A stretch of 64,000 nucleotides of DNA, taken from the NCBI GenBank assembly GCA_001179505.1, contig CDMY01000954.1, forward strand, positions 1 to 64,000, read 5' to 3'. A program made the position numbers and the translations under genes. The stretch comes from Vitrella brassicaformis CCMP3155 (taxonomy: Eukaryota; Protista; Chromerida). Shown here piece after piece: positions 14,673 to 42,766 of the stretch; positions within the stretch are counted from its first letter, which is position 1; every line of letters starts with the position of its first letter. The notes below the pieces were generated by a model. The model saw only the letters and a list, made by a program, of their open reading frames with translations, did not search any database and had not been told where the DNA came from.

Positions 14673-16508
14673 ATGCATTGAATTCACCAGCTGCTAAAAG
14701 TGCTGCACTTAATTAGTCTGACTAGCCTACATGTATCTACTGAGCGGCACGTATCAGCGCCACTCGCCATTTCTCACTCGCTCCTCGATGACAGAGGCAC
14801 ACGGGCGAGTGGCACATCCGGCTGATGGGTCGACTCTCGCCTCATTGGGTACACATACATATTGGGTACATTGCGTCAAGCCTGCAGCGACACAGAAGGC
14901 ATTTCAGTGTTGGGGGTGTATTGATGACACCCCTTTCTGCCTTTAAAGGCAAAGGTCCCTAGCTTGGCTTCCCCACTACTTCATTTGCCTACCCCCAGCT
15001 AGGGGTTGAGGTCTCCACGGGGCTCAAAGTCCTCGACCGACAGGCTATCGCAATTTAGTCGGTGGATTTCTGTTTGTGAGCCTGTAAGACACAAGCAAGG
15101 GACTCTGGGGGGATAGAATAAAGGCCTTGGATGGCCTTCCTGTGTATGTGTGGGGTGCGCTGACGGCACAAACCGCCCTCACAAAAGGGGGTGTCTGGCG
15201 GCCACCGCAGTTCCCACCGCAATTTCCAAGAGGCTTCCCCTCTCACACGAGTGATTGAGGGCCATGTCACTCCACAGGTCGCCACCTCTCTGGCGTGTGA
15301 CCACGCGTTTTCTGAGAGAAAAGATCAAATGGTGCTTTCCAACGCGTGGCCGCCATGCTCCTGGGTACGGAGACTACTGTGGCAGCTGCCCCGTCGCCGC
15401 GGCATGAATCAAAACCGGCTGCGCGCTCAGATCGTCCAAGCATCTCATGAATGTGACGCGTTCTTTAAGCGATTCGAACACAGATGCACTGACGGGTATG
15501 TGTGTGTTGAAGACTTCCTCGAGATCTTCCGTGAGAGGTCGCAGATCAAGTGCTCCCGAAGACAGATCTGAAGAGTCTAAGAAGACCTCACCCGAGCGGG
15601 TGGCGGCCTGTGGCTGTTGTCGCGCAGCAAGCTATCTCTGCACGGGTGCTTGTATCTCGTCTTTGGGAGGGTCTTGCTGTATGGGAAGGCCACGAAATGG
15701 CGTCCGATTCCCTGACGACCGGAAGGAGTTTGTCTGTCGCAGCATGGGAAAGCCTCATGAACCAGCGTGTCATTCCAGCCTGTGCCCCAACGGATATGCA
15801 GCAGCAGCGGCAGAGGCTATCGGCGGCCCTCAAGAGTATTCTTCGTGCTCATGGCCCGAAGGGCTTTTTGCTGCTCTGCCCGGCATTATGGCGCTCTGCC
15901 CGGCACATGGGGCACACTTGTGTCTGAAGGATGGATGCACTGTGGGAAGTGTGGGAGCGCAACGCTGGAGCAGCGAGAGGTGTTCGAGCAGCACTTCAGC
16001 TACTTGTCTGCCGTCGGCAGGTGTCTGCGGCTGGCAGCTGCCAAGCACATCGGCCAGCGACCCGTCGGCCAAGTGTGGGCATGAGTGATGGTGCTGACGG
16101 TGTTGACGAGGCGGATGTGGCGATGGATGACGTCGAGGGTGCCGATTATTAAGGGATCTGCTGGTGACCCAGGCAAGGCAGATCCCCAGTGAGGATGAGT
16201 CGGAAGGTGATATCTCCCCACGCGGTATCTCTCCACGCGAGGGGAGATATCACCAAAAAGAGAATCGAATCTGCGGCAGCTGTCCGAGAAGCTATCAGAA
16301 GAGCAGACGGCTTCCGCGGGCGGTCTCGAGGCCATTGCTCAGCGTGCTAGAGAAGACGTCACCGCCCCAGGCCAGTTTATCGCGCCGACGAGCATAGAGA
16401 GGGTTGCGGATGACATCACTAACGCGTCGGCGACTCACACGGAGAGGATGGGTGCTCTGAAGGCCAGACAGGGGGCGCAGCTGGCTCGGCTGATGGCTCT
16501 ATCCATGG
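14673..16508 (+). pseudogene. Decayed, intron-less coding-like segment of unknown origin between the two CCp3 copies
   Basis: Microsatellite-free ~1.8 kb with protein-like blocks in changing frames separated by stops, e.g. LRAQIVQASHECDAFFKRFEHRCTDGYVCVEDFLEIFRE and LEQREVFEQHFSYLSAVGRCLRL. I do not recognise the family. Confidence 0.35.
16206..16254. repeat. Perfect 14-bp inverted repeat with a 21-nt loop
   Basis: GGTGATATCTCCCC (16206-16219) and GGGGAGATATCACC (16241-16254). Confidence 0.9.
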
Positions 16509-24100: not shown

Positions 24101-27100
24101 GCGCGTGCCTGCTGCTCGCTCTCGTGCGGGGCCGGCCGGCCCTTCTCGAAGATGAACTTGGCCATCAACGACGACTGTACCGTACCACGATGCGATGCAT
24201 GTGTGTGCACGCGTGTGTGCGTGTGTGTGTCAGTTGTGTGTGTCTTACGGCCTTGTCGGCGACGGATGTGACGTCCACGTTGGCCAGACTCTTCTTGGGT
24301 GGACGGGAGCCCGTCACTGCCAGCACGACATATGATGCACGTCATCGATGTGTTGGGTGTGATGTGGTGTGGATATGGCCACTTGACGCCGTCCCCTGCT
24401 GACTTAGACTTACTTTCGGTGACAGCGGATTCGAGAAGGCTGAGTAGGTGGTCTTTGGCGAGCTGCCCGTGGATGGTGGGCACCGACACGTAGTCAAACA
24501 CGTTGATGTCAGAGATGCGCTCACTGACGAAACACAAGAGCACACACACATACACACATACACAGGGGCTGTGCTGTTCGTGGGTACTTGTGGTGGTGTG
24601 GTGTGGTGTGGTGTGGTGTGTCGCACATACCATCCATGTATCTGACCTGATGACGTCGAAGTATTTGGCTACGGCCTGCCGCACCTTGGGCGAGGTGTCG
24701 CAGATGGGCTTGAAACGCTCCAAATCCTTCAAGATGTCCTTCTGAACAAACCATGGATAAATGGATGGATGCGTTCGCCGTGCCTGCCTGCCTGCCTGCC
24801 CGTCCAGTCCAGTCCGGCCCCACCTCACTTACCACGTAGATGTGCGTCATGGGCTGCTCCAACAGCTCGCTGACACACACACACACACACGAGAGAGGTC
24901 TGCCGCTGTCTGTGTGTGGCGCGAGTGAATGCCCACTGACCTGAGGCCCTCGTAGACCGAGGCGCGGACAGCCGTCGAGTTGAGATCCACAGCTGCATTG
25001 ACAACCGCACACAGACATTGATGTGAATCTGCGCTGCGCTGCGCCTGGATGTGCGGCCCCTGGCTGGCTGGCTGGCTGACCGCATCTGAGTACGAGTTTG
25101 ACCAGTTTGTTCTGGTACTCCGGGGTGAACACCTGCCAGGCCTCAGACATGTTCTGCCACACGGCACACACACATTGAATGCAATCTATGTATGTGTGTG
25201 TGTGCCACGGTCGCCGACTATGCTCCCCCGCTGTGTGCGTGTGTGTGTGTGGTTACTTTGCACACGCCTCGTATGGCGGCCCGCCTGACGCCCTCGCTGT
25301 CGTCGGTGAGTCCGTCCTCGTATATCTGGTAGTGCTTGAGCTTCTCGTCCTCCAAATCAGACACCGTCATGGCATGCGGACGCTGAACGAACCGACCCAA
25401 CCGACCAGTGGATGCGCACAGAGAGAGGGGTGGTTACACACAGTCGGCGTACCAGCAGTGGGAATGCGGCGGCCAGCAGCAAGAAGGCGTTGCTTCGGAC
25501 CTTCCAATTCGCTACCTGATCGGTGATCGACACACAGACAGACAGACAGAAATATACATCCGTGACGCCCCGGCCTCTATCTGTCAAGACACCCACACCA
25601 GCCACCCAGGCACTGACCTTGAAGCTGCGCCACAGGATGGGCTCATAGAGGCGACACAGCATGTCCAAACAGTCGTGGTGGCTGACATGCGGGAGGGAGG
25701 GAGGGAGGGTGGGTGGGCGGGGCACACAACACACACACACACCCCTTGCATCGCATCAAGGCACATACATGGATTGAGTGGCTGTGCTGGCTGACCCCTT
25801 CATTTTGTCGTGGAATGTCTGGAGGACCTTCCTGCACTTGGTCGCCACCTTGAGGTCGCACCACAACGCGCACTCCATCAGGTCCTGCAGGCCACGCCGT
25901 CACCCACCCCACACATGACCATGGACATGTGTGCATGTCGGTTCTGACCTGCACGGCGTCCTCGATGGCCAGCTTGATCTCCTCATCCGTACAGTCACCC
26001 TGGACGGTCGGCATACACACGTGTAATCAACGAAGACACCAGACACATGATATCGCCTCACCCTCCCAGGCCCTCACTCACCCAGGCTTTGTGCAGTATG
26101 TTTGCGTAGTGCTTGAGGTGGTCCTCGCGGCACTCCCGCACCTCATTCTTGATGTAGTTCTTCATGTACTGCAGTGGGATTAAAGGGATCGACACACACA
26201 CACACCACACATACACACCACATACACGAAGGCGTCAGGTGGGTGTGGTGTTGTGGGTGGGCTGCATGTGTGTGGTGTGGGCATATACGTCGAGTAGATA
26301 GAGGGGCATGGACTCGTGGAGGTGGAACAGACGCGATATGAAATTGCGACCGTACGCTCTGCATGACAAACAACGTAGCACAGCTCGCGAGTGGCCCTCT
26401 GTGTGTGTATGTGTGTGTATGTGTGTCGCCCTGGTACACGGAGAAGAAGATGGGCGTCATGGCGCACTGTCCGAGCAGCTGCTTGACCAGCTCGTTGGCG
26501 CCCCCGTCATACACCAACTCGTTCAGCAAATCCCTGACCACACACACGCACACACACACACACACAGAGAGAGAGAGGGGGGGAGGGGGGGTGGCAGTCG
26601 GTGTGCACACATGTTGCGCTGCCCCTCCCTCCCTCCCTTTCTCCCTTCCCACCACTGCTCGCTCAGCCGCTTGACATCAGCCTGTGTGGCCTGCACGCAA
26701 AGGGCGGGAGGGAGGACAAAGACAGACAGACAGACAAACCATCCAGTTGTCCGTTCTCACAACCACCCATCCCTCCATCCCTTTCTCTCTCCTTCTCTCT
26801 CTTGCTCAGTCAGTCAGTGGGTCACTTTGATGCTGGTGGCCTTTGTGAGCAGGAAGAGCAGCAGGCCGCCCTGCACGGACTCGCAGCCCTCAAACCCCTC
26901 ACTACACAGCCGCTCGTACGCCATACCGATCTGCTCACGGGGGCGTCCCAACGGCAGCAGGTTGAAGAAACCTGCATGCCATGCATCAATCAGCACACGT
27001 CACGAACAGAACAGACAGATGGTAAGTGCGTCTTCTATTGTACTTTGGCAGGCGTCTGCGGTTTGCAGCAGGCCTTCAGGCGCGCTCTTGACCTCCTGCT

Positions 27101-27595
27101 GCTGCTGCTGGTCACCATCCCCCCGTGCGTGTGCGTGCTGGCTGGCGAGTGCCTCCACGGAGGAGATGAGCAACAGGGCATAGTTCTCCAACACACGACG
27201 AGCATCATCACTCTGATCAACACAATACAACACATCACCATGAGTGCATTCGCAGCTGCTGAGTCTATATCTCCTCTCCCGTATTGGCTCACCAGGTACT
27301 CTCCCTGGTCCGATACGATGTTTTGGCTATGCAGCTCCGGCCCGACCACATCAGCCACGGTCACCCACAGGGCGTCGTGCTCATCGTACGGCAGATCTCT
27401 CAACTCACCAACCAGATCCTCCTGAACCACCCATCCACATCACAGCCACACACACATGCGCCATCCGCAGAGGGTGCGAGCCGGAAGTGGGATGCGTACC
27501 TTTGTCCCTTTGGCCTCTACGAAGGCATTGAACGAGGGGATGTCGTCGAAGGAGGCGGGAGGCGCCTCCTCAGGTTCATCTTTCCTCTTGGGCAT
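20849..27595 (-). CDS. NCAPG2: Condensin II complex subunit G2 (HEAT-repeat), about 30 exons
   Basis: CAP-G2-like blocks: CRLYEPILWRSFKVANWKVRSNAFLLLAAAFPL, YEDGLTDDSEGVRRAAIRGVCK, LNSTAVRASVYEGLR, ELLEQPMTH. Start MPKRKDEPEE at 27595, acidic tail, TAA at 20849-20851. Confidence 0.85.
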
Positions 27596-27951: not shown

Positions 27952-30900
27952 ATGAGGCGACGACGCTTCAGAGCGCTGACCCTCCCGCTGGCTGCATTTC
28001 TCGTCATCTTGCTACTTGTTCTCGATGGTGCGGTGTGCGAGATGGGTTCGGCGGAGCAGCCGCGGACGGTCCCGCCCACGAGTGTCTTCGGCGAGGGCTG
28101 CACTGTGTTGGGGGCGGAGGTGTTCACCCTCTTGGTGCCGCCGCCCACCCGGACGTCAGGCAGCACATTGCCGTACACCTGGGAGGATAAGTCGCTTGGC
28201 AAGATGAAGAAGCTCTTCGATGGAGAGGGCCACCCACCCTCACTCGTCGTCAGGTACGCATTATTATTCCATGGATTGGATTGTCCACCCACCCACGGTC
28301 GACTCCGTTGTAGCATGCATCCCATAAGCTTCTTGTCGCTCGTCTGGCTTGGTTTGGTGCAGGGATGACCCTCTTGCGGGCCAAGTCATGTATCTCAGGT
28401 TCAACCACGGCAAGTACTTCTCGGCTCCAAAGACACAGGCCGGCCGGCTGTGCGTCCCGCTGCTCGACGGCGGCAGCGGCTCATTCACCCTCTTCTTCCA
28501 CCTGGCCATCAACACACCGCCCCAGCCAGGCGAAGTGCAGACCATCCTCGACGGGCCGCCGGGCTTCCGTATCGGCTTCATGGCGGCATATGACCAGGAC
28601 GGCGATCCCGACCCTGACACGGTGTACTTCGGCCTCCTCCCTGACGAGCGGGAAATCGACATATACACACCGAAGAGATACAGCCCGGATGAGGGCAAAA
28701 ACACCACACAGGGAGAGGAGGGGGCGGCTTTCTTGGAGATGGCGCACAATGCCTCGTACGTGGCGCCGCTGACGATGGTGCCCATGTGTTGGCGGCAGCC
28801 GCAGGGGAACCTGTATGCCATGGCGGTTGAGCTGGGCATCTTTCGCCTGTACCGCATGGGGCTGTCACTGACGAAGGAGCCGCTGTCGATGGAGTCACGC
28901 ACGTGGATGGGGCTGCAGGCCGGGCCATCCACCATGAGTCTCGGCTGCGATAAGAACGGACAAAAGTGCTTCAAAGGTGGCTGGGTTGAGAGATGGGCAC
29001 ACACACACATAGATAGAGACACCTCCGCTGTGCTGTGGGCATCGCCTCGGTCTGTGCCTGTGTGTAGGTGTGATGCGTCTCTTCCATTACAGTAACAAGG
29101 GCCACCTGGGCAGCTCCACTGAGGATGCCGCAGCCAACTTCTTCGACCTGCTCTGTGAGCCCCCCCCCCTCCACACACACACACAGAGACATTTGTGTGC
29201 CTGCCATGTCTGCCTGTCTGTTTGTCTGTCTGTCTGTGTGTCTGTCTGTCAGCGTTGCGGAGTTTCTGTGGCAATGGCAAGGTCGACGGCGGCACTGAAG
29301 AGTGTGACGTACAGGCCACGCCGGACACATGCAGCTGCTCGTGCAGACGTAAGGAGCCAACCGTATTTATGCACACAGAGCCTGACTGACACGACACAAC
29401 CACCAAAGTCATTCTCTCTCCCCTCCCCCCGCTCATGCAGTCAAGTGCCCCCCATACGTCAACCAGCTGACGGCTGACGACACCGCCCACCGCTACCTCG
29501 CCTCCCTCCCCGACGTCCCCGGCAGCCCCACCGCCGAGAAGTACCTCCACCGGGGGTTCGAGCATTCCACCAGACTCATGCTCACATGCCGCAATGCCGG
29601 CGGGGCGGCCAATGTGACTGAGCCCAGCTACCATGGCGACGTGACCGAGGGGCGAGACATGGTGCTCTGCGGAAATGAGCGGTCCGGACAGTGGACGCAG
29701 CGGACCATGGACTGCCTACGTAATCCATCGAGGCACACACAAATGGATGAATGGATGGATGGCGGGGCCGCATGGGTGTGGGTTGATTTGATTTGATTTG
29801 ATTTGATTTGTGTGCAGAGGACTGCGACCCAGTTCGAGAGAAGTGGTGGAACATGAGTGACGTCGGTGGCGGCAGCACCTACCGCCTGGAGCAGCCCAAG
29901 CGACCCACCCGCATCCACAGCGGGGAGGAGGTCCGTATCGCTTGCAACCCAGACCTGCCCACACGACGAGGCGCGCCCACGCAGGAGGTCCTCTCTTGCT
30001 TCGACGGATACATCGACCCACTGGGCCTGCCCTGCAAACCCACCTGCCCCCGAGACATCATGATGCCACCGTCATTCAGCAAACAGCTCAACAACCACTA
30101 CTCTGTGGAGGGCGAGGGATACCAGGAGGGGTCCAAGCGGGTTCTGACCTGCAGGGACGGGTATGCGCCGCCGGTTGGGACGCCATTTCTCAATGGCCGG
30201 CAGGAGATCGACTGCTACGATGGGGAATGGCAGAAGGTCCTTCTCGAATGCAGAGGTACGTACGTGTCTGTATCTGGCAAGGGAGTGTTCCTCTACCTCC
30301 TTCATCTCTGTCTGTCTGTCGCCACCCGGCATTTCTGTCACTGACCTCACCTGCCCTGGTCATCAGGTATGTGTTCGCCCTTCAAGCTGCCCACCGAGAC
30401 AGCCCATCGGTACCACACGGACCCCCCACTCGGCCAAGAGGAGCGCCGGTCAGGCGCTACCGTACAGGTGTGGTGTCTGGACCAGTACCAGGTGCCCGAG
30501 GGGCAGCACCAGCCACAGACGGTCGAGTGCACCTGCTACGGCGACCCCGACCAGTGCGAGACCGACGACGACCTCTGGCAGTGGTCCAGCTTCCACCTCG
30601 AGTGTGCCGGAAGCTGCCAACCCTACCAGCCCCCCGAGCCCGGCGTCAGGGTGCAGTACTTTAACGCTGAGGGCAATGTGCCCAAGCAGGTCGAGTACGG
30701 TGCGGAGATTCAGCTGTCGTGCGACGAGAGGCAGGGGTGGCGCACCATGGTGAGTGCCGACAAGGACACGGAAGTCCTCAAGTGTGTGGGCGACCAATAC
30801 ACTATCAAATCCCTCGTCTGCTACGGTCGGTGAGAGGCAGAGACACACAGACTTACAGACTCACAGACAAGACAGACTTACCGTACCGTGGTTTGCAGGT

Positions 30901-33900
30901 GTGTGCACTGGCGAGCCCGACATCCCCGAGCAGGGCGTGGCAGTGCAGGTGACAGGCGACGTGGCGGCGCCCTACCGGCACGGCACCACCCGTGTGCTGA
31001 GCTGCATGACGGGCTACTCCATAGAGGACGAGACCAACATGCCCATCAAAGACCTGCTCCTATGCAGCAACGGACAGTGGACGGAGCGACAACTCGCCTG
31101 CAGAGGTCTGCCTGGTCTATCCCACCCACCATCCCACCCACCCACATCTCTCTGTCGTCTGTCTGTTTGTGCAGCTGATTGCCCGCGTCCGCCGCACTTC
31201 CCCGATGAGTGGTACATGACCAAGCCCCTCAGCCAGGCCGACCTGGCCGCCAAGGCCGTCCATCGCCACGGTGAGAAAATCACCGTCGTCTGCCGCGAGA
31301 CGGGCATGGAGCAGGTGCTCAGCTGCCTTGACGGAAAATGGACTGAGCTTGCCCTGCCTTGCGCAAGTGAGTGCAATACCATCATGAGCAGACCGAACCT
31401 TACACACAATGTATGTATGTATGTGTTTGCCTGTCCTGTCTGCCACACTGTCAGAGAGGTGCCCCGTGCTTACGTTGCAGACGCCCCCTCTACGGAAAGG
31501 GGAGGCGACCTTCAGTGCGAATGACGTCTACGTTGTGGAGCCCAAGATCGCCCTGTCGGCCCAGATGGAGCACGCCAGCATCGTGACGTTACGGTGCAAC
31601 AGGCAGAACGGCTTCCACAGCGTCAGCGGGGGCGACGTGGACTTCCTGGCATGCAACAACGGCAAATGGTCCCTCCAGATGCTCGTCTGCGGACGTAAGT
31701 GGCACATCGGCACATCACCCCACGCACACATAACACGAACCTCTCCCTCCCTCCCTCCCTCCCTGAATCTGTCTCACCACATAGGAGACTGCACCCAGGT
31801 ACCAGCATACCTCCTGGGCGAGCGGTACGTCATCACCGCCGTCGCCCGACGCGCCTCATCGCTCGACCCCAATCACTTCCCCCAGGTGCGTGCCCTCGAG
31901 AACACCGAGGCGGCCGAGGTGGTGGTGACAGACAAAGGGCCCCTGGGAGACCTCGTCAACGCGGCCTCACACCCACACGGCACCAGGGTGCGGGTGCAGT
32001 GCAATGTGGCAGACAATTATGTGCCGCAGAAGGGCACCGCCGCAGAAGTGGCCAGGGAGGAGGAAATCACCTGCGATCGGGTGATGTACTCTGACCTGCC
32101 CATGAGATGCAACGGTCAGGCAGCCAGCCAACAGCATCAATCACACGCAGCGCAGCCATCCCATCCGCCCTCTGCTCATGGGGTGTCTCTCCCCTCCTTG
32201 CCTGTCTCGCAGGGCCCTGTGGTCGCTTCCCGTCGCTGCCTCACCAGGAGCTGTATCCGCTGCGGCCGTTGCCGGAGGGCGAGCTGGACGAGCCGCAGCA
32301 TCAGTGGCACGGCACACAAGTGGAGGTCAGGTGCGACCGATCCCGCGGGGCCACAGCCACACCAGCCGCCTTCGAGGGGTCTGTTTCCGTCTGCTCTAAC
32401 GGCACCTGGAGCCCCTTCCCGCCACTCGTCACATGCAACAGTCAGTAATCGAGCCAGCCGGACACGCAGACGATACATATGCAGCCTCCCTCCCCATTTG
32501 TGTGTCTGTCTGTCTGTCTGTGTGTCTTTGTGTGTAGTTCCATGCGATAAGTATGTGCTCGGTGAGGGCATAACGGTAGTTGGGTTTGTGCCCGACCCCC
32601 CGGTGCCGCACCGCACAGAGATCAAGGTGCGGTGCGAGACGGAGGTCGGATACTACAACCTCACGGGGGAGAACCCCGTCGCCACAGTCATGTGCACCAA
32701 CGGCAACTACACCGCACCGATACCAGAGCTCTTCTGCCGCAGTGAGGGAGCACACCGGAGAGAGACACCAATAGGAGGAGAGGAGACACGCAGAACAGAC
32801 ACGCCAAACAACAGACCGACCGTTGCCGTGTGTCTGACGTGACGCATGCATGTGTCTGTCTGTCAGGGCAGTGCAAGGACTTGAAGGCGGTAGTTGATGC
32901 GGTGCGTTACGGCTACACTGTAGTGGAGTCCCTCGACATGATGGACAACCAGATGGCCTGCTCGGGCGACTCGGTCGACCCATTCCGCCTGGAGAAGGCC
33001 ACAGATGCCAACCTGGCTCTAAGCGCCTACCCCAGACACGGAAGCTGCGTCAAGNNNNNNNNNNNNNNNNNNNNNNNNNNNNNNNNNNNNNNNNNNNNNN
33101 NNNNNNNNNNNNNNNNNNNNNNNNNNNNNNNNNNNNNNNNNNNNNNNNNNNNNNNNNNNNNNNNNNNNNNNNNNNNNNNNNNNNNNNNNNNNNNNNNNNN
33201 NNNNNNNNNNNNNNNNNNNNNNNNNNNNNNNNNNNNNNNNNNNNNNNNNNNNNNNNNNNNNNNNNNNNNNNNNNNNNNNNNNNNNNNNNNNNNNNNNNNN
33301 NNNNNNNNNNNNNNNNNNNNNNNNNNNNNNNNNNNNNNNNNNNNNNNNNNNNNNGGTGGGTCAGTCAGCAAACATGGCGACTGAGGCGCCTGAGTGAGTG
33401 AGTTGCAGGGATGTACCTGTCTGTATGTCTGTCTGTCTGTCTGTCTGTGTGTCAGTTGTATGAAGGCTTACAGTCCCGATGTGGATTCGTCATATTGGCG
33501 CAAAGTGGGGTGTGGCGACCCACGTGAGGGACCCAACTCGTGGAAGGAGGCCTATGGCGTGCCGGAATGCGACACACTCAGATGCGTCAACGGCATCTGG
33601 ACGCCACCTTCATTCAATTGCAGAGGTACGCGGGCACACCACAGCACAGCACAGCAGAGCACAGCAGCCTCATCTCTCTCTGTGTGCACACCTGTCTGTG
33701 TATGTGTGTCTGTGTGTGTGTGTGTGTGTGTGTCTCGGTGTCTCATCAGCTGACTGTCCGAATCCGTTCAAGAAGGAGCGGCCAATGGGAGTGACGTTTG
33801 TCGACATTACCCAGGACAAACCCTACTACCATGAGGGGGAACAGATACACATCACATGCAAACGTACCCCACGCCGAAACAGACAGACCTCTAAAGGCAT

Positions 33901-36900
33901 CGGCCGACCCATGACTTGACTGTGAGCATCATGTCTCTCTGTGGGGTGTGTGTGTATGTGTGTGTGTGATGGGTGCACTGCAGTGGGCGACAATCCATTT
34001 GTGAGCTACACGGCCATCTCCCCCGCCCGCCCCTCAGCCGTCGAGACACTCACGTGTGACGACGGCTACTTCCCATACCTCGCTCTGAGATGCCGCAGTA
34101 AGCCTGCACACAAAGTCCCTTCCTCTGTCCATAGTCCTTGTGCCATTCATTAATGCGCCCGCCCATACCTTCAGGGCGTTGTGAGCCATACGTGTCCCCG
34201 TATGGGTCAGCGGGTCATGTGGTGACGCACACGCGTCCAGCGTCCGACACCAACGTGGACGATATAGCGCGTGCCTACCAGGACCGGCCGAGTGAGATGG
34301 AGTCTCAGCTGCATGCAGTGCTGGTGCACTTCAACCACAAGTCACGGAGGTACATCGAGTGCGCCGAGCGGTGGAGCGACCCCGACTGGCACGGCAGCCA
34401 GGGAGACCTCGTCGAGTGCCAGGAGGGCAAGTGGACCAGACAGGAAATTCGATGCAGAAGTGAGTACGGACGGCATCGAATAAATGAGATGGATCATCTC
34501 ACCACCAACACCCATACCGTCCCCGCGTCGCGTGTCCCTCCTCCCTGTGTGTCAGAGCAATGCCCGTCCGTGGCCTTCTACAGCCTCGACCCCACTCGCT
34601 ATAAGGTCACCTACGTGGGCCGCGATCAAGTAGAGGAGGCCATGGCGGCCAGGCCCCTGCCCCCCTCGGCTACTCCCCCCCTGTACCCCTCCCACCCCCT
34701 CGGGGATGTCCTGGTGCGGGATCCCAGCAACTAGTATGACGACGGTGACCAGGTCAATGTCGAGTGTGTCAATAGCGACTATGCCGGGGAGATTGAGAAG
34801 ATGGAGGCTGACGGGCTGCTCGAGTACCCCTTCTGCACCAAGGAGAACAAGATTTGCATTGTCCGCTGCACAGCCGGCACCTGGACCGAGCTTGGGGTGG
34901 CATGCTTCGGTCAGTGAGCGAGACACAGAGAGATAGCGACTGTGTGTGTGTACGTTTGTATTGTGGAGGCGTGCATGTGTGTGTGCAGCACGGTGCCCAG
35001 TGTTCGTGCCGCCTCAGAGCGACCGAATGGAGTGCGACCCGCCGATGTTCTGCAAAGACCCCAAAGACCTCACCGAGGTAAGTAGTGAGTATCCATCCCC
35101 AAGTAAATTGGTATGTCTCACTGTGTGTGTCTTCTCTCTGTGTGTGTGTAGGATGAGCGAGTGAGCCGCTACTACGTGGCGCCCGACAATGACACTGACG
35201 CCGCCGGGGCCACCACCACCACCGCCAGTAGCACCACCAATGTGTTCCGTCACGGGTCTGCGTTGCGGCTGTCGTGCAAGAAAGAGTACCAGCCTCACCC
35301 CTGGCCGCAGGAGGAGGAAATCAAGTGCCGCGACGGGCGCTGGTCCATCCCCACACTCGAATGCTACAGTAAGCTAAGCAGACCCTGATCTTCCCCATAC
35401 AGACAGACAAGGATGGGGGCATGGATGCGTGTGGATCCCCCCTCGTATGTCCATCAGCACCGTGTCGCGAGGAGCTGGATCTGGGCAAGATGCGCCCTTA
35501 CGAAGATGTTCAGTTGTATCAGACGGCGGAGGCGAGCGACAACCCCGTGACGGAGGCCGAGCAGTACCAGTCGCTCAAGACGGAGTACAAGGCCCTCCCC
35601 AGCGACCCACACAGTGTGCGGTCGTCCACAGACAAGGACAAGCTGCCGGTGCCTGACAAGAGCGAGAGCAAGGCCCTCTACATGCACGGCTTCCGCTACG
35701 TGGTGCGATGCAACCCCGAGTCAGACGCCACCGCCATCATCAAGCAGCCCTATGACTTCGCCACTTGCTGGGACGGAGAGTGGACGGACACTTCAATCAT
35801 GTGCAGAAGTAAGTGGGGGAGGGGGGGATGTCTTCCTTCCTCAGGCACGCGCCTTCTGTCTGTGTGAGCATGAGTGGGTTTGTCATGTGCGTCTCTGCAG
35901 AGAGCTGTGGCGACCCTTACAAGGTGTTCGCAGCGATCCACGAGGTGACGTCCAACTATGTGATCGAGACGAGCGGCACGACCCACAACAGCATCGCACA
36001 CGTCACCTGCGCCGACGGATTCAGCCCGGCGGCCGGCAGAGAGCCGGAGAGGATCGAGTGCAACGACGGACAGTGGTGGACACCCACACTCAGATGCAAC
36101 CGTACGTAAGGCCACAGGCAGATGCACACTCACAGACACGCAGACTGAGTACATACATAATCTCGGTGCCTTGGTTGACGTCTTAATTAATGACAGGTAA
36201 CTGTCCCGAGTATTACGAGTATGCGAAGGATGCCGACCCTGACGTGTTAGACGACACGCGGTACGTCAAGCAGGGCTACTCTGGCAACACCAACGCTGGC
36301 AGCTCCTTCAATCTCACCTGCGGACCGTTCCACACAGCGGTGAGCTGAGCTGCGATTGATTGATTGCACGCAGCCGCCCACGCATACAGCTGGTATGTAT
36401 GTATGTGCCGCCTCCCTACCTCCCACCCCACCTACCCACCCACAGGGTCAGCTGGACAATCTCCCCGGTGGGCATCGCGGTCCCAAAGTCCGGCAGGAGA
36501 TCACATGCCTCGACGGCAAGTGGACGGCGCGGCTCCTACACTGCTTCCGTAACCACACACACAGACACGCAGGCACACACATACATACACGGCCATGTAA
36601 TGTACGTGGCTGGCCCTATCTATATCTATGTCTATCTTGCCTCCCTTGTCACTCACTCATTCCCTCACCGCCTGCCCTGCAGACAACTGCCCCGAGTTCG
36701 CCCCTGAGAACCCCCTGGACACGGACACCCTTTTCGGCTCGGGCTACATAGTGGAGGGGGTGGAGGTGAGAGACGTGAGGGACGACCAGCGGTTCAGCGC
36801 CGAGGGGGAGCTTCACATCCAGCACGGCGCCACGCGCAAGATCAAGTGCTGTGTGGCGGGGCAGAAGCTACGCCAGGGGCCGGACCCAGCCCTCGAGAGC

Positions 36901-39627
36901 GGCAAGTGCGTGTGGGACTGGGCCACGGAGGATAACATGGAGCCAAGGGAGGCCTCCGTGCAGTGCTCTGACGGACTGTGGACGCGACCTGACATCATGT
37001 GCAGACGTAAGTACGCTACGCGAGCAAGATCCTATCCTATTTATCTGTAGCGAGCTGTCAAGTTTCTCTCACCCACACAGAGACAGACAGACACACCATG
37101 TAATTATTATATGTAAGTGTGCCCTTTTCTCTCTCTATCTCTCTGTTGCGTTGCTGAACCCGATCCATCTCCCCCCCAGCGATGTGTGAGGCTCTCGGCC
37201 CCGAACACGAGCTCTTGTGGCAGGGTTCAGCCAAGTACATGACGAGCAAGAACAAGCCGGGCAAGCTGGAGGGCCGCAAGGGCGAGAGCGGGGCGCAGAT
37301 GATCTACCCGGGTTACTGGGCCAACATTCGGTGTGCCCCGGGTTACCTGCCGGAGCCCTTCCAAGGTACCGACTTCAGGAGGGACTGGAACAACCGGCCG
37401 CAGGCCAGGGCCGTATGCCACAACGGATATTTCACACATGTCCCATTCGAATGCATCAGTCAGTAGGGAGACAGACACTGAGGACGCACAGGCAGACAGA
37501 CAGACAGACAGACGTACCTGGCTGCATGCCTTGTGTGTGCACACCCTCCTTGATTGCAGAGCAGTGCCCGACTCCCGTGGATCACTGGGAGCCCGACGCG
37601 CGTGTGCGTGCGGTGGCGGTGCGGCAGCCCACCAGCAACCCCCCCAAGATCAGCGGGCTGGTGAAGTCCAGCCCTTGGGTGGTGCGGCACGGGCAGTCCT
37701 TCTACACCTACTGCTGGAGCGGGTCCAAGGCGGCACCCGGGCGGAAGCAGCGGCTGGAGGGGGACGTCTCCTACTACCAGCGGTGGCGCGGCCAGTGCTA
37801 TTTTGGATGCAAAACCACCTTCTACAGGCGCAAGTATAAGTGGACCTGGAACCTCAAACACAACTTGATGGACTATAACGCTGCTGGTCGGTGTGTGGGA
37901 GGGAGGGAGGGAGGGAGGGAGAGAGGGCGAGAGGGGGGGAGGGAGGGAGGGAGGGAGGGAGAGACACATGCACACAGGCAGGCCCGTGTATGTATGTTTG
38001 TGTATATGTGTGTTGGGCGGGTCACTGATGGTTTGATGGGTTCGTTGGTTGGTTGGTTCAGGCGACGCCCCCGACGATATGAAGAAGTATCAGTGTTTCT
38101 ACGGCAAGTGGGTGGGCAAGGACCCCCCCATGGTCTGTATACAGCTCGTCAGACTTCACGAGATGTGCATCGACGGCGGCACGTCGGTCCATGTAGCGGG
38201 CCGGTCCTCGCCAGTGGCCCTTCGGCACGTCAGAGTGGGCGACCGGGTCCTCTCATGGCGGCCGGCAGCACGGGGCGGCAAGGGACAACTCACATATGCC
38301 GAGGTCTACTTCAGGCAAAGCTATGGCAAGAAGTGGACATTCACCACGACCATCACGTTCGCCCGGCGGGACGGCAAGGCCCCTCTGCGTCTCTCCCCCA
38401 CACACAGGCTGCCCATCTGCCGCATGCTCACACGGAGAAAAGCCCGGAATCGGCCAACTTATGATCTGTTGTCGTGGATGATGGGTGGAGGATGGCGACA
38501 TCGACAATGTGCTGAAATGCTGGCGGGTATGGGTGTAGATGTGTCCTCCAGTGGGTCGTCGACGGTGTCATGGTCTGTGGAGTGGCTGGTGGTTGCTGCT
38601 AAGGACGTCCGGCGGGGGGATTGGCTGATGGTCTATGATAAAGGTGGAAACGCCACTCATATGCAGCTGAGCCAAGTGCTGGAGGCCCACACCTCCATTG
38701 AGGTACACACACACACACGTCTGGCTGGGCTGGCTGGCAACAGCACGCACAGACCAGACCAGACCATGCCTCCTCCCTCCATTGAGTGATCCATTCATTG
38801 TGTGCGGTGCATATGTGTGTGTGTGTCCACCAGCATCGTGCAATGGAGCTGGTATACACCACCACGGGGTATCTCGTTGGCGGGGGTGCGTTGGTCACCG
38901 ATGCCGACGAGCCACTCGACGAGTACCTCCCGTGGACACAGCTAACCAACCTCGATACACGGCTGGTCTACGCCCTATTTGGCCCCGACGCCGTCCAATC
39001 TGACCTTTTCCAGACATTCTGGCGGTCAGCGAGACAACACACACATACACACACACACACACACGTGTGCGCGGAAGACAGCACCGGAGGATTTCTGCTG
39101 TGAGTGGTGGTTCTTTGTTTTGTGTTCAGGTCGACGGGCCATTTGTTGACGGGCTTCCAGAGGTATGCGGAGAGGTGGTTTGCTGCCGCTCGCAGCCTGG
39201 CCTGGTCATTTTTGCTGCTGCCGCTGAGCTAGCCATGTCATTTTTGCCAGCTAGGGCTTTATCGACTACTGATGTGTGTGGTGTGATTATGTGTGTTGTG
39301 ACGTCCTATAGGACATTCGTCAGTCACTGTGCGTGTGGGCGTCGTCGTCTGCGTGGCGTGGCACTGCATCGATCGCATCGCACGCTGTGATGGTGTTTGG
39401 ACATGCGTCTGTCAGTATCATCATGGACATATATTTGTCTCACTCAGTTCATGGATCTCTATGTGTCTGCCTACTGGTGGGATCCCCACCACCTGGCCAT
39501 GGATGCTCTCGTCCCTGCAGTGCACCCCGGTTCCGCTTGCGCACTCTGCAAGCAACGTCGAGGTGTACTGTACTGCATACCGTACCGACACAGCCAAGTG
39601 GGGGAACAAACCAGCGAAGGCACATGA
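27952..39627 (+). CDS. Giant secreted protein: signal peptide, LamG-like domain, CGNG-x-EECD Cys knot (DUF4215-like), about 22 Sushi/CCP-like modules, C-terminal Hedgehog-type Hint domain plus tail
   Basis: Exons spliced by hand are in phase from ATG 27952 to the Hint exons. Repeated C...C...C-x-x-G-x-W...C modules. Hint begins CIDGGTSVHV at 38166. One in-frame TAG at 34732-34734 and one gap at 33055-33354. The 3' exons after 39014 and the stop at 39625-39627 are tentative. Confidence 0.85.
33055..33354. other. Assembly gap (300 N) inside the Sushi-Hog gene
   Basis: Ns in the sequence; the gap interrupts a Sushi exon. Confidence 1.
38166..38905 (+). other. Hedgehog-type Hint (Hog) autoprocessing domain
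   Basis: N-terminal CIDGGTSVHV, VRVGDRVLS, block-B-like LRLSPTHRL, VAAKDVRRGDWL, and C-terminal LVYTTTGYLVGGGALVT. One intron (donor after 38702, acceptor before 38834). Confidence 0.85.
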
Positions 39628-39649
39628 ACATCTGACGCACACACACTTG

Positions 39650-42600
39650 TCAGCTCTGTCCTGTCCGCCCTCCCTCCCTGCTGCTCTGCCTGTCCCTGTC
39701 TCTTCTGCGCTCTCGATTCCCCTTCCCACTCCCACTCCCACCACGGTGGCCACCACTGACTATGGCCGCAGACGGCCTCTGTGTCCCTCCTGCTGCTGCT
39801 GCTGCTGCTGTTGGTGCTGGTGCTGATGCAGGCGGCGTGGTCAGTTGTTTCGGGTTGGCGCTGTCAGGCCGTGGGGGCATGTCGGAGAGCGGCAGGCGCT
39901 GCTCGTCGGCTGACGGCTCGATCTCTGTCGCCTCGTAGAACCAGGGGGAACCTTCCTTCTCAGCCTACATGCAGCCAACGCACACACCACCACACACCTG
40001 ATTGATTGACTGACTGGCTGGACACGTGTGTGCGCGCGGGTGGGGGTGGGTGTGCGTGTGGACACCTCTTTCCGCTTCTGCGAGGCGATCAGGTTGCTGA
40101 GATGGGGGTTGTCCAAGCCGACCTACACCCACACAACACGAGACGCATGCTCACACACCGACCCACACCTACCTTGACAAAGGCCTGAGCGACGCTCTCG
40201 AGTTGGTAGGGCGTGAAGCGGTCGACGTGGCGCGAGATGTGCAGCCCGAAGGCCTCGAACAGCTGCCTGTCCGGCAGGTCGAAGTGTGCGAAGGCCTTGA
40301 GTACGTCTGCAGCGTCGTGTGCGTTGTAGCCCTTGACGTGGCGCCTGGCGAACACCGACAGGGCCGTCAACAGACGGGTGTCGGGATGGTCCACCTGCAG
40401 CCAGCCATGAGAGACCAGAACAGATGATATATTGAGATTGCGGATCTGTGGGTCACTTACTGCAGCATATGCCGTGGCGATCTGCGAGACTGCCCGCGGC
40501 GAGAAGCTGCCGCCACCCAGCCGCTTCCGCACCAGCTACACACCACACACAGGAGGAGTGCCTTCGTGTGATTCACGGTAAGGTCGGGCTGCTTACGTCG
40601 GCTGCTTTGAGGAAAAGGCCTTTCCTCCACTTGGGTTCTGACTTGAGCCTCGCCGTGGCCAACAGGATCTGGGCCACATCCTCCCCCGTGAAGGTATCCA
40701 ACCTGCACACAACCAGCCCAGCCACACACACGTGTCACCAGAGAGTGCGTGTGTGGGTGGCTGGATGTGGCATAGCACACACACTTGGCTTGGATGGTGG
40801 AGGCGAGTGCGGCCCAGACGTCAGTCATGTGGTCCGTCTGCAGGACGCTGGCCGCCTGCACACACACATAGATAGACATCCCAGGCAGGCAGGCAGGGAG
40901 GCAGTGTGTGGTGAGAGATGTCCTCTATCTATAGCTGACTGACCGTGGCGATGTTGCAGACGCTCCTGGGAATGAGTGCATCTCTGTCGAGCAGCACCTT
41001 GACCTGACGCATCAACGCCTCAATCAAAGAGGGGGGAGTCGTCACCTTCAGACGCGCCAAAGCTGACGGATCCACACACACAAACACAGACTTTGGTTTC
41101 CCCATCCAATCCATATGTGTGTGTTGTGTTGTGGCTGACGCTTAGCTTACCGGTCATGCAGATGGACACATCAGTGGGGATCATGTCTTTGCACATCGTG
41201 GGCAGGTGCTGCTCGCACAGCGCCACCATAGTGCTGTTCTTGTGGTGCAGCTTCCCGTAGGCACTCAGCACGCTCGGGAAGAAATTGACGCTCGCCTCAC
41301 CCCTACACACACACACACACACACACACACGGACAACGGATTCTGGTCTGGTGTGCAGTCCTTTCTTTCTCTATGCCTGTGTCTGTTTGATGTCTTGCCT
41401 GTCAGAGAACGTCTTGAACCTCTCAGCGAGTGCGTCGAGCAGCCGGACGTCCTTGACGCCCCAACGGTCGTAGGCAAACGCTTCACACACATCATCATCA
41501 TCATAGCTGTCTTCCCGTCCCGCGTCATTGATTGGCCAGCTTACTGGTCATAGCGACTTGCTGCTGTGTGAGGTCCGGGGCCACCTGCTCGATCCGCCGC
41601 GCAATGACATCGGCAAACTCAATGTCCAGGAAATTCGCACGCCCACACGCATTGCCTGCCACATCCATCCATCCATCCACTCACACAGAGGGGAGGGGCG
41701 TCTATATGTGTGTGAGATCTGTGTGTACCGACCGATGTTGACGACATCGATGGTGTTGAGCTGGTCAAAGATGAGCTTGGCGCGGGCAATGAGGGTGTCG
41801 AAGAGATGGTCGGGGAAATAACGCAGCCGGGAACAGGCATTCACTGACCACACAACCACCCACCCGCACACGCACACGCACACACACACACACACAGAGA
41901 CTCTGTCTGTCTGCGTCCGTCCCCCGTTTGTTTGTGTGCAAGTGCGTGTGTGTGTACGTGTGTGTGCGATGTCGCGCCCCGAGGCCCTGTCTGCCATGGC
42001 GATGGACTCCTGCGTCAACAGGTCCAGCAGCTTCTCGTGACGGTACTCAGCCTACCTCCGCAGTAGACGCCACACACATCACACCCATCACATCACGTGC
42101 CGCATTCACCCAACACATGAAGGATAGATAGCTTGTTGGCTGGCTCTGGCTCATTCATCTATGCTATGGACCCCCCACGTACCTAACCTACCTGTGCCAG
42201 AGCGTTGAATATGAGGGCGATGTCCCACGCGTCGGCGTCAACCAGATACTGACCACAGACAGCAACACACACAGCTCTGGCCAACTGCATGCACACCCTC
42301 CATTCTGTCTGCCTGCCTGCCTGCCTGCCCCACTCACCGGTGCGGTTTTGTCGCAGAATTCGCTCCACCACCGTCTGTCGCCAAACTTGACTTTCGCGGC
42401 GTGGTTGGCGACCATTGCGATCTCGGTGGCCCGGAGGATGGGCAGGAGCGACAGCGCCACCCAGGCATGCGCCTTGACCTTGTCAGCCTCGCCCCTCTCG
42501 TGGATGGCGTGGAACTCCTTGGCCCAGTAACTCACCTCACTCGGCGGCGGCACCTGCAGTGACGACTGATCTTCTTGTTGGGGGACATGCTGACGGGCTG

Positions 42601-42766
42601 CGGGGGAGTTTGGTGGACGGGCGGCTGCCGGTGCATCTGCTGCAGTGGCTGCCTGGCCGGCTGCGTGGCTCAGTGAGCGGATGTGGCCTCTCCTGTGGTG
42701 TTTGGGAGGCGGCAGGGGGAGGGATGAAAGGGAACTTCGCACACAGCGAGGCATCCAAGTCGCCAT
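39650..42766 (-). CDS. Organelle-targeted alpha-helical repeat protein (heptatricopeptide/OPR/FASTK-like, 37-39 aa repeats), probable RNA-binding protein
   Basis: Arg/Ser-rich leader MATWMPRCVRSSLSSL. Tandem repeats FSPRAVSQIATAYAAV..., YNAHDAADVLKAFAHF...DRQLFEAF, FTPYQLESVAQAFVKVG, AWDIALIFNALAQVG spaced 37-39 aa. About 14 exons. TGA at 39650-39652. Confidence 0.75.

What the first reader, a model, noticed from the sequence alone, without database searches (positions are those of the whole stretch)
27952..39627. Giant Sushi-array protein fused to a Hedgehog-type autoprocessing (Hog) domain
Seen: signal peptide, LamG-like domain, Cys knot and about 22 tandem Sushi/CCP-like modules, followed immediately (…PPMVCIQLVRLHEM|CIDGG…) by a Hint domain and a roughly 100-aa partly hydrophobic tail placed like a sterol-recognition region. 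Established: Hog domains cleave before their first Cys and can attach a sterol to the new C-terminus; Hog domains fused to unrelated N-termini occur in several protists, including alveolates. Inference: a self-cleaving system that releases a very long adhesive rod and may tether it by a lipid adduct, with no TM or GPI anchor evident. I know of no description of this LamG-Sushi(n)-Hog architecture, but could not search.
Basis: partly seen in the sequence, partly recalled or inferred. Interest (0 to 1): 0.85.

Follow-up and report, generated by a model that had tools for sequence, protein, structure and literature searches.

The report
Giant Sushi-repeat protein with Hedgehog-type domain
A gene of the coral-reef alga Vitrella brassicaformis joins a very long secreted rod of 22 Sushi-like repeats directly to a Hedgehog-type self-cleaving domain, but this copy has a stop codon in the middle of the rod and lacks the residue that Hedgehog needs to attach cholesterol.

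Summary
The window is the first 64 kb of Vitrella brassicaformis CCMP3155 contig CDMY01000954.1.

**Hint domain.** The fold is well supported. The AF2 model matches Drosophila Hedgehog-C (1AT0) with Z 18.4 and rmsd 1.9 Å. The model's Cys aligns with the catalytic C258. A helical tail follows, placed like the sterol-recognition region.

**3' end.** Spliced RNA contigs confirm the last two introns. The stop is at 39230-39232, not 39627, so the tail is about 75 aa.

**Gap.** By collinearity with an intact 2734-aa paralog, the assembly gap hides about two codons plus an intron donor.

- An in-frame TAG at 34732-34734 sits in conserved coding sequence of module 16. It is why the public annotation shows two genes.
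- Hedgehog's cholesterol-activating Asp is Gln here, so sterol tethering is not supported.

This copy belongs to a family of at least five Vitrella paralogs. The scan noted other copies on other DNA of this genome, and several carry a single lesion. I rate it a new variant of the known protist Hog proteins, of moderate interest.

The parts
27952..28253 (+). Exon 1: start codon, signal peptide (about 27952-28041) and a conserved F-x-G-x-GHPP stretch
   Evidence: It is the first ATG of the ORF. The hydrophobic h-region scores KD 2.91. The donor AG|GTACGC was read. The public model starts at 28042 and so omits the signal peptide.
28363..28976 (+). Exon encoding a beta-rich, possibly ConA/LamG-like domain (3' boundary predicted)
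   Evidence: The exon is conserved in paralogs L002 and P0006. The Atlas feature search points to Laminin_G_3 clusters. There is no Pfam hit, and the AF2 model has pLDDT 47.
29253..29348 (+). Cys-rich unit, FCGNGKVDGGTEECD...CSCSC. The matching unit of the tandem paralog P0002 hits DUF4215.
   Evidence: The P0002 unit hits PF13948 at 23.3 bits, below the cut-off. This exon has no Pfam hit of its own.
29440..38138 (+). Array of 22 Sushi/CCP-like modules spread over many short exons. Several modules have long insertions between Cys1 and Cys2.
   Evidence: Module map. Pfam Sushi hits. Local HMM. The array is collinear with P0006.
33055..33354 (.). Assembly gap inside Sushi module 12. It hides about 5 nt of exon and the intron's 5' end.
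   Evidence: The flanking pieces align to P0006 residues 1306-1367 and 1370-1422. An intron 3' end, (GTCT)n...CAG, follows the gap.
34732..34734 (+). In-frame TAG in conserved coding sequence of Sushi module 16. It marks the end of the public upstream gene model.
   Evidence: DNA contigs of runs X3 and X4 show no difference over 33746-37058. Paralogs read L or N at this position. The differences from L002 follow a third-codon-position pattern.
38061..38702 (+). Exon holding the second half of the last Sushi and the N-terminal 179 residues of the Hint domain. It contains Cys1 at 38166-38168 (Met|Cys junction), Gln at the Hedgehog general-base position within 38307-38318 (YFRQ), and SPTH at 38394-38405.
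   Evidence: Pfam Hint scores 20.5 bits, below the 29.7 cut-off. HMM alignment to 1AT0.
38703..38833 (+). Intron (GT..AG), confirmed by a spliced contig
   Evidence: Run X1 record 2 joins 38700 to 38832, with the cut fitting 2 places further on.
38834..39024 (+). Exon holding the C-terminal Hint strands (ELVYTTTGYLVGGGALVTDAD, with motif J's Cys replaced by Asp) and the conserved start of the tail (DEPLDEYLPWT...FQTFW)
   Evidence: It lies within public model P0001.
39025..39129 (+). Intron (GTCAGC...CAG), confirmed by two spliced contigs
   Evidence: Run X1 record 3 and run X2 record 8 join 39023 to 39129.
39130..39232 (+). Last coding exon: the end of the helical tail (...RYAERWFAAARSLAWSFLLLPLS) and the stop TAG at 39230-39232. 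The transcript continues to at least 39401.
   Evidence: Contigs run unspliced over 39129-39228 and 39173-39401. P0001 ends at the same residue.

Best explanation
**What the locus is.** It is one gene of a Vitrella-specific family. The order is signal peptide, beta-rich (possibly LamG-like) domain, one Cys-rich unit, 22 Sushi-like modules, a Hedgehog-type Hint domain and a roughly 75-aa helical tail. Read through, that is about 2,650 residues.

**Shown here**
- The domain order.
- The Sushi-Hint junction inside a single exon.
- The two 3' introns and the stop.
- The Hint fold, with its Cys on Hedgehog's catalytic Cys.
- Collinearity with an intact 2734-aa paralog.

**Inferred mechanism**
- In the secretory pathway the Hint domain makes an N-to-S acyl shift at Met|Cys (38163-38168).
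- The resulting thioester is resolved by a nucleophile. This frees the Sushi rod from the Hint-plus-tail part.
- Hedgehog's cholesterol-activating Asp is Gln here. The nucleophile is therefore more likely water or a non-sterol acceptor than a sterol.
- In the tandem paralog P0002 a TM helix follows the tail. For the family, the likely role of cleavage is release of a giant adhesive ectodomain from a processing or anchoring module.

**State of this copy.** In the sequenced strain a TAG in module 16 breaks the frame. Unless it is bypassed, only the first 15.5 modules are made. This copy would then be a very young pseudogene or a truncated allele.
For: - **Organism and annotation:**
- **Sushi array:**
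- **Junction exon:**
- **Spliced RNA contigs:**
- **Hint homology:**
  - Profile against PDB.
  - AF2 model with pLDDT 72 and pTM 0.71.
  - Foldseek hit to 1AT0 at E 1.4e-8.
  - VIA-align Z 18.4 with model residue 6 on chain residue 258.
  - Atlas Hog models aligned to residues 264-267.
  - Atlas features.
  - The Hint part of paralog P0006 passes Pfam's cut-off, 33.2 against 29.7 bits.
- **One gene, not two:**
  - P0006 is collinear from 28376 to 39025, across the gap and the TAG.
  - P0001 starts in the middle of a Sushi module and has no signal peptide.
- **Conserved residues:** Cys1, S-x-x-H and the tail are conserved.
- **Paralog anchor:** P0002 has a TM helix after the tail.
- **Literature:** Hog domains with unrelated N-termini in alveolates are described in PMC2362128.
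Against: - The TAG at 34732-34734 is present in the reference and in contigs of two DNA runs. It lies in conserved coding sequence.
- RNA contigs cover only 38562-39656, so no transcript links the Hint exons to the upstream array.
- This copy's own Hint score is below Pfam's cut-off, 20.1-20.5 bits. A single-sequence search of PDB finds nothing.
- Several catalytic positions differ from Hedgehog:
  - The general-base Asp is Gln.
  - The motif-B Thr is Ser.
  - The motif-J Cys is Asp.
  - The residue before the Cys is Met, not Gly.
- The structure model rests on an alignment of only five paralogs.
- No cleavage has been observed.
Confidence: 0.6

Rival explanations
1. Young pseudogene or truncated allele. 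The TAG is real and is not bypassed. The cell makes only a secreted protein of about 1,600 aa that ends in module 16. The Hint part of this copy is never translated.
For: - The TAG is in the reference and in two DNA read sets.
- It lies in coding sequence that is conserved in paralogs.
- Other family members also carry single lesions. Scan notes say the same for two further copies.
- RNA contigs are sparse and shallow.
Against: - The 1025 codons after the TAG are intact across many exons.
- The 3' introns are correctly spliced in RNA.
- The first 33 Hint residues are identical to those of the tandem paralog. This suggests recent homogenisation rather than decay.
Confidence: 0.35
2. Hedgehog-like sterol esterification. 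The thioester is attacked by a sterol held by the helical tail, and the Sushi rod ends up lipid-tethered.
For: - The tail forms a helix-loop-helix placed like the SRR.
- The SRR is described as a helix-loop-helix in PMC7906309.
- The tail is strongly conserved among paralogs.
Against: - The Asp that activates cholesterol in Hedgehog aligns with Gln here, and with R, R, E and E in the paralogs.
- Motifs K and L of the SRR are not recognisable.
- According to Bürglin 2008, it is unclear whether the tail regions of the nematode Hedgehog-related proteins can add cholesterol. That is why they were named adduct-recognition regions.
Confidence: 0.1
3. Inactive Hint. The domain keeps the fold but no longer cleaves, and serves as a structural or binding module at the end of the rod.
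For: - Several Hedgehog catalytic positions are changed: Asp to Gln, Thr to Ser, motif-J Cys to Asp.
- The Pfam score is low.
- The residue before the Cys varies among paralogs: M, N, R, T and A.
Against: - Cys1 and the His of S-x-x-H are kept in all five paralogs at only about 40% overall identity.
- Replacement of the motif-J Cys is usual in protist and plant Hog domains (PMC2362128).
Confidence: 0.2
4. The TAG is spliced out. An in-frame 129-nt 'exitron' runs from 34606 (AAG|GTCACC) to 34734 (...CTAG|). Removing it would take out the stop and leave a compact module 16.
For: - GT and AG lie at phase-0 positions, and a pyrimidine-rich tract precedes the AG.
- The donor resembles the RNA-confirmed donor GTCAGC at 39025.
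Against: - The stretch is coding in the paralogs. Six of eight differences from L002 in the first 33 nt fall at third codon positions.
- P0006 has no GT at the matching site.
- No RNA covers the spot.
Confidence: 0.1
5. Two independent genes, as in the public annotation.
For: The public models are 28042-34734 and 34801-39232.
Against: - The second model begins in the middle of a Sushi module and has no signal peptide.
- The 66 nt between the models continue the module in frame.
- The single-model paralog P0006 is collinear across the split.
Confidence: 0.04

Closest known systems
Hedgehog C-terminal autoprocessing (Hog) domain: Hint module PF01079 plus sterol-recognition region (Drosophila Hh-C, PDB 1AT0/6TYY)
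   Same: - The fold matches: Z 18.4, rmsd 1.9 Å, 142 of 145 residues.
- A Cys at the first position aligns with C258.
- The GD-x-V-L-S and x-P-x-H blocks align.
- A helix-loop-helix tail follows the Hint core.
- It sits at the C-terminus of a secreted protein.
   Different: - The cargo is a 22-Sushi rod, not the Hedge signalling domain.
- The general-base Asp is Gln, the motif-B Thr is Ser, and the motif-J Cys is Asp.
- The residue before the Cys is Met, not Gly.
- There is an insertion of about 40 aa in the Hint core.
- The Pfam score is below the cut-off for this copy.
- The tail shows no recognisable motifs K or L.
Protist Hog proteins with unrelated N-termini (Bürglin 2008, PMC2362128: dinoflagellates, Cryptosporidium, ciliates, red algae, mosses, Glomus GIN1)
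   Same: - It is from an alveolate.
- It has a signal peptide, a lineage-specific N-terminal part and a Hog domain.
- The motif-J Cys is replaced, as in red-algal and moss Hogs.
   Different: - The described N-terminal parts are short or of unknown fold. None is a Sushi array, and none is thousands of residues long.
- This Hint subfamily was found only in Vitrella, by phmmer against 1.84 billion representative proteins.
Nematode warthog, groundhog and quahog proteins
   Same: They are secreted cargo-plus-Hog proteins. Whether their tails can add cholesterol is unclear, so the tail was named an 'adduct recognition region' rather than a sterol region.
   Different: The cargo domains differ and are small. 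The lineage is different.
Inteins, bacterial intein-like (BIL) domains and Vint domains
   Same: They share the Hint fold. Inteins score Z 13-17 and Tetrahymena BIL2 scores Z 15.2.
   Different: - There is no C-terminal His-Asn and no downstream extein, so protein splicing is not expected.
- There is no VWA/Vwaint context.
- Hedgehog-C ranks above all inteins in both fold searches and is the only kind of hit in the profile search.
Long CCP/Sushi-array proteins (complement receptor 1, CSMD proteins; apicomplexan Sushi proteins such as ASP)
   Same: They have tandem four-Cys/Trp modules forming an extended extracellular rod. Woo et al. 2015 note Sushi expansions in chromerids.
   Different: As far as I know, none ends in a Hint domain. 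The modules here are very divergent and have long insertions.
Other self-cleaving modules in giant surface proteins (GAIN/GPS of adhesion GPCRs, SEA of mucins). This is a functional analogy from general knowledge.
   Same: Autoproteolysis next to a membrane anchor separates a large adhesive ectodomain from its stalk. In paralog P0002 the Hog is followed by a TM helix.
   Different: The folds and the chemistry are unrelated. This copy has no TM helix.

Membership tests
Hint/Hog (Hedgehog-type autoprocessing domain) | Hint fold | tested here: met
   The AF2 model (pLDDT 72) has 1AT0 as its top Foldseek hit, E 1.4e-8, TM 0.83 by target. VIA-align gives Z 18.4 and rmsd 1.9 Å over 142 of 145 residues.
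Hint/Hog (Hedgehog-type autoprocessing domain) | Pfam PF01079 gathering score (29.7 bits) | tested here: not met
   This copy scores 20.1-20.5 bits, E about 4e-4, and only the N-terminal half matches. The Hint part of paralog P0006 scores 33.2 bits. The five-paralog profile hits Hedgehog-C at E 0.007.
Hint/Hog (Hedgehog-type autoprocessing domain) | Nucleophilic Cys as the first residue of the domain | tested here: met
   The Cys at 38166-38168 is model residue 6 and aligns with chain residue 258 of 1AT0. A Cys in a C-I-D or C-V-A context follows the last Sushi in all five paralogs.
Hint/Hog (Hedgehog-type autoprocessing domain) | Motif B, T-x-x-H | tested here: inconclusive
   The motif here is S-P-T-H. 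The Ser and His are invariant in the five paralogs and align with T and H of TPAH in 1AT0. Ser for Thr is conservative, but its effect has not been tested.
Hint/Hog (Hedgehog-type autoprocessing domain) | General-base Asp for sterol transfer (D46 of Hh-C, in FMD) | tested here: not met
   It aligns with Gln (YFRQ, 38307-38318). The paralogs have R, R, E and E. The role of D46 comes from Xie 2016 and Zhao 2019, as listed in PMC7906309, and from the title of PDB 6TYY.
Hint/Hog (Hedgehog-type autoprocessing domain) | Motif J (..SCYA) at the end of Hint | tested here: inconclusive
   The sequence here is ALVTDAD, with Asp for Cys. Bürglin 2008 reports Cys replaced by Ser, Thr or Asp in moss and red-algal Hogs.
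Hint/Hog (Hedgehog-type autoprocessing domain) | C-terminal adduct/sterol recognition region (helix-loop-helix) | tested here: inconclusive
   Two helices are predicted at model residues 219-238 and 241-276, with pLDDT 60-86. Atlas Hog models align through residues 264-267. No sequence motif K or L is seen.
Hint/Hog (Hedgehog-type autoprocessing domain) | Autocleavage before the Cys, and the nature of the adduct | not testable with these tools
   This needs biochemistry.
Sushi/CCP (PF00084) | Modules of about 60 aa with four Cys and a Trp before Cys4, reaching the Pfam gathering score | tested here: met
   Three modules score 26.2, 24.3 and 22.0 bits against the 20.7 cut-off. Three more score 15-18 bits. 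The local HMM links most of the 22 modules. Many modules have long insertions.
Laminin G / ConA-like lectin | Profile or fold match | tested here: inconclusive
   There is no Pfam hit at E<=0.1 and no PDB sequence hit. The AF2 model has pLDDT 47 and was not searched. Atlas features score 0.95 to Laminin_G_3 clusters, in 13 of 20 hits, but with only 118 shared features.
Intein | C-terminal His-Asn followed by a Cys/Ser/Thr extein residue; host protein continues after the domain | tested here: not met
   The domain ends ...GGALVTDADEPLD and is followed only by a 75-aa tail and a stop.

The most novel reading that the evidence does not exclude
The family uses Hint thioester chemistry to join, not only to cut. 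The carboxyl end of a rod of about 2,400 aa would be transferred to a non-sterol acceptor, such as a cell-wall glycan, a lipid or another protein, by a Hog that lacks the cholesterol base. In addition, the single stop or frameshift seen in several copies would be bypassed at the RNA or translation level, which would give regulated long and short forms.
Probability: 0.08. Interest if true: 0.85.

Novelty: new variant of a known kind. Interest (0 to 1): 0.5.

Why it matters
- Hog domains outside animals are known mostly from short, fragmentary sequences, and what they release or attach is unknown.
- Here a free-living relative of apicomplexan parasites has a small family in which the cargo is a giant adhesin-like Sushi rod. 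One member also has a membrane anchor behind the Hog.
- This gives a concrete system for two questions:
  - What did Hedgehog-type autoprocessing do before it was used for signalling?
  - Can it work without the cholesterol-activating Asp?
- The result also corrects the public annotation. Two gene models are really one gene broken by a stop, and the signal peptide was missed.
- It flags a run of single lesions in this family that needs re-sequencing.

Tried and rejected
- **PDB with single exons.** Single-sequence searches of PDB with the two Hint exons gave only chance hits.
- **Wider relatives.**
  - phmmer of the Hint exon against 1.84 billion representatives found only Vitrella paralogs, plus spurious bacterial Ig-repeat proteins.
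  - The two word-indexed searches returned only Vitrella proteins.
- **LamG-like exon.** The AF2 model was too poor to search.
- **Classical intron over the TAG.** I considered 34606-34734 and rejected it as the main reading. The stretch is conserved as coding sequence in paralogs, with third-position differences.
- **Tiny intron.** A 21-nt intron was rejected as too short.
Rejected, because RNA contigs run unspliced through the TAG at 39230 and the public model ends there.
- **'Insertion' in P0006's Hint.** This is most likely a retained in-frame 222-nt intron, GTGAGT...GAG.
- **Literature.** Searches found no paper on a Sushi-Hint architecture. Woo 2015 lists HINT examples only for Chromera.
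- Exons were searched one by one by reference, and public models were used by id.

Full report
**Source and setting**

The protein P0001, found with the Hint exon, is encoded on NCBI record CDMY01000954.1 of assembly GCA_001179505.1. Its coordinates there equal the window coordinates. The sources name the organism Vitrella brassicaformis CCMP3155. The window has 58-60% G+C and many short introns full of (GTCT)n, (CA)n and (GGGA)n runs.

**Observation: the 5' part and the Sushi array**

- On the + strand the first ATG of an ORF is at 27952. It encodes MRRRRFRALTLPLAAFLVILLLVLDGAVC..., which has a strong hydrophobic core.
- After an intron comes an exon of about 205 aa (28363-28976). It is conserved in two paralogs.
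- Next is a unit reading CGNGKVDGGTEECD.
- I then mapped 22 modules with the Sushi pattern of four Cys and a Trp, between 29440 and 38138.
  - Three modules reach Pfam Sushi's gathering score.
  - Three more fall just below it.
  - An HMM built from those six recognises most of the rest.
- 'LamG-like' remains a lead only. Pfam and PDB sequence searches are blank and the AF2 model is poor. Only language-model features point to Laminin_G_3.

**Junction and 3' end**

- Exon 38061-38702 reads ...KKYQCFYGKWVGKDPPMVCIQLVRLHEMCIDGGTSVHV... with no stop. The end of the last Sushi and the start of the Hint domain are therefore physically one exon.
- Contigs from two runs that behave like RNA carry two joints.
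  - One is 38702|38834.
  - The other is 39024|39130, seen in both runs.
  - Both skipped stretches are GT..AG.
- Further contigs run unspliced over 39129-39228, 39173-39401 and 39381-39656.
- The frame entered at 39130 stops at TAG 39230-39232. The public model P0001 ends at the same residue.
- The tail after the Hint core is about 75 aa and has no TM-grade segment.
- RNA contigs do not reach upstream of 38562. No transcript evidence links the Hint exons to the array beyond the shared exon.

**The gap**

- The pieces on either side of 33055-33354 are the two halves of Sushi module 12.
- They align to residues 1306-1367 and 1370-1422 of the intact paralog P0006.
- An intron 3' end follows the gap.
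- The gap therefore most likely hides about five exon bases and an intron donor.
- I could not test this with reads. The single read-laying run was used on 33700-39699.

- Module 16 contains an in-frame TAG at 34732-34734.
- The public annotation ends one model there (28042-34734, 1569 aa) and starts the next at 34801 (P0001, 1025 aa). The start of P0001 lies inside the same Sushi module and has no signal peptide.
- The sequence around the TAG is coding.
  - The paralogs read GSPFVRKSGDNYDDGD and GSLFDRSSLYDDGD where the window reads GDVLVRDPSN*YDDGD.
  - Six of eight differences from the L002 paralog in the first 33 nt after the candidate donor are at third codon positions.
- DNA contigs of two runs agree with the reference over 33746-37058. 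They may come from the same culture.
- An in-frame GT..AG 'exitron' (34606-34734) could remove the stop, but there is no RNA evidence for it.

**Similar lesions in other copies**

- The paralog on CDMY01000358.1 has a one-base frameshift in a C-run of the same exon. It is split into models in the same way.
- The tandem neighbour in this window has a frameshift near 58480-58500, where its two models meet.
- Scan notes report the same for two more copies. I did not check those.
- Only P0006 is a single model of 2734 aa. Even that model seems to retain an in-frame intron in its Hint domain.
- tblastn of P0006 is collinear with the window from 28376 to 39025. I therefore read the locus as one gene, broken in this strain.

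**Is it a Hint/Hog domain?**

- Sequence evidence for this copy is weak.
  - The exon alone scores 20.5 bits against PF01079, below the cut-off of 29.7.
  - It finds nothing in PDB by phmmer.
- Profile evidence is stronger.
  - A profile of the five paralogs has Drosophila Hedgehog-C as its three best PDB hits, E 0.007-0.05.
  - The Hint part of P0006 passes Pfam's cut-off at 33.2 bits.
- Structural evidence is strong.
  - An AF2 model of P0001:745-1025 has pLDDT 72 and pTM 0.71.
  - By Foldseek its top hit is 1AT0, E 1.4e-8, ahead of inteins and BIL domains.
  - By VIA-align it gives Z 18.4 and rmsd 1.9 Å over 142 of 145 residues. The model's Cys lies on residue 258 of the chain.
  - Predicted full Hog domains in the ESM Atlas (Indian hedgehog, arthropod Hedgehog, Glomus-type AIG1-Hint) align over 191-198 residues, up to model residue 264-267. 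That reaches into the two tail helices.
  - Language-model features give the same family.
- The SRR of Hedgehog is described as a helix-loop-helix (PMC7906309).

**Catalytic residues**

| Position | Hedgehog-C | This copy |
|---|---|---|
| First residue (nucleophile) | Cys | Cys, present in all five paralogs |
| Motif B | T-x-x-H | S-P-T-H, with Ser and His invariant |
| General base for cholesterol | Asp of FMD | Gln; R, R, E and E in the paralogs |
| Motif J | Cys | Asp, as Bürglin reports for red-algal and moss Hogs (PMC2362128) |
| Residue before the Cys | Gly | Met |

**Mechanism**

- The most likely reading is thioester formation at Met|Cys, followed by release of the Sushi rod.
- Given the missing Asp, hydrolysis or a non-sterol acceptor is more likely than a sterol.
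- In the tandem paralog P0002 a TM helix and a basic cytoplasmic end follow the tail. For the family this suggests cleavage of a giant ectodomain from a membrane-held processing module.
- All of this is inference. No cleavage has been seen, and in this strain the Hint part may not be translated at all.

**Comparison with what is known**

- Hog domains joined to unrelated secreted N-termini are known from alveolates and other protists (PMC2362128).
- Woo et al. 2015 note HINT domains and Sushi expansions in chromerids. Their named HINT examples are from Chromera only (PMC4501334).
- I found no paper describing a Sushi array ending in a Hog domain.
- The intact paralog is already in public protein sets with Sushi and Hint on record.
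- By phmmer against 1.84 billion representatives, this divergent Hint subfamily occurs only in Vitrella.
- I therefore rate it a new variant of a known kind, of moderate interest.

**Rule-bound omissions**

I did not build or search a joined full-length model, and I did not read through the TAG. Exons were searched by reference, and public models by id.

Noticed in passing
window 53984-64000, continuing to about 70510 of the contig (locus L004): A tandem paralog lies on the same strand. Its public models are 54490-58471 (1065 aa) and 58547-70510 (P0002, 2886 aa). P0002 contains F5/8-type-C lectin domains, DUF4215-like units, Sushi modules, a Hint domain and a C-terminal TM helix. The two models meet at a frameshift inside a Sushi module near 58480-58500.
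   Followed up: partly
window 38166-38264 compared with P0002 residues about 2590-2622: The first 33 residues of the Hint domain (CIDGG...VLSWRP) are identical in the two tandem paralogs, while the rest of the domain is about 50% identical. This looks like a recent gene-conversion patch. The DNA was not compared.
   Followed up: no
L002 (CDMY01000358.1), about 9880-9910: The paralog encoding P0003 has a one-base frameshift in a run of C in the same Sushi exon that holds the TAG here. Its annotation is split in the same way (a 917-aa model ending at 9953 and a 989-aa model starting at 10001). It also has an assembly gap at 6405-6704.
   Followed up: partly
L003 (CDMY01000337.1), 15688-15909: The public model of the intact paralog P0006 seems to retain an in-frame 222-nt intron (GTGAGT...TGTGAG) between the first Hint strand (CIDQHATVWRL) and the rest of the domain. 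This adds 74 spurious residues.
   Followed up: partly
window 27952-28041: The public upstream model starts at 28042 (MGSAEQ...). It therefore omits the 30 codons that encode the signal peptide.
   Followed up: yes
window 18690-18989: A second 300-N assembly gap lies outside the finding.
   Followed up: no
window 37880-38020 and many other introns: The introns carry (GGGA)n, (GTCT)n and (CA)n microsatellites. Contigs of the DNA runs break at several of them (for example 37882-38014), and 18-nt repeat pieces match unrelated RNA contigs.
   Followed up: no
window 24801-27595 (-), 39650-42754 (-), 42956 onwards (+): The neighbouring public gene models are a condensin-2/HEAT-like protein, a RESC6-like protein and an RCC1/HECT protein. 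None has an obvious functional link to the finding. The RNA contig 39381-39656 could belong to the 3' end of either converging gene.
   Followed up: no
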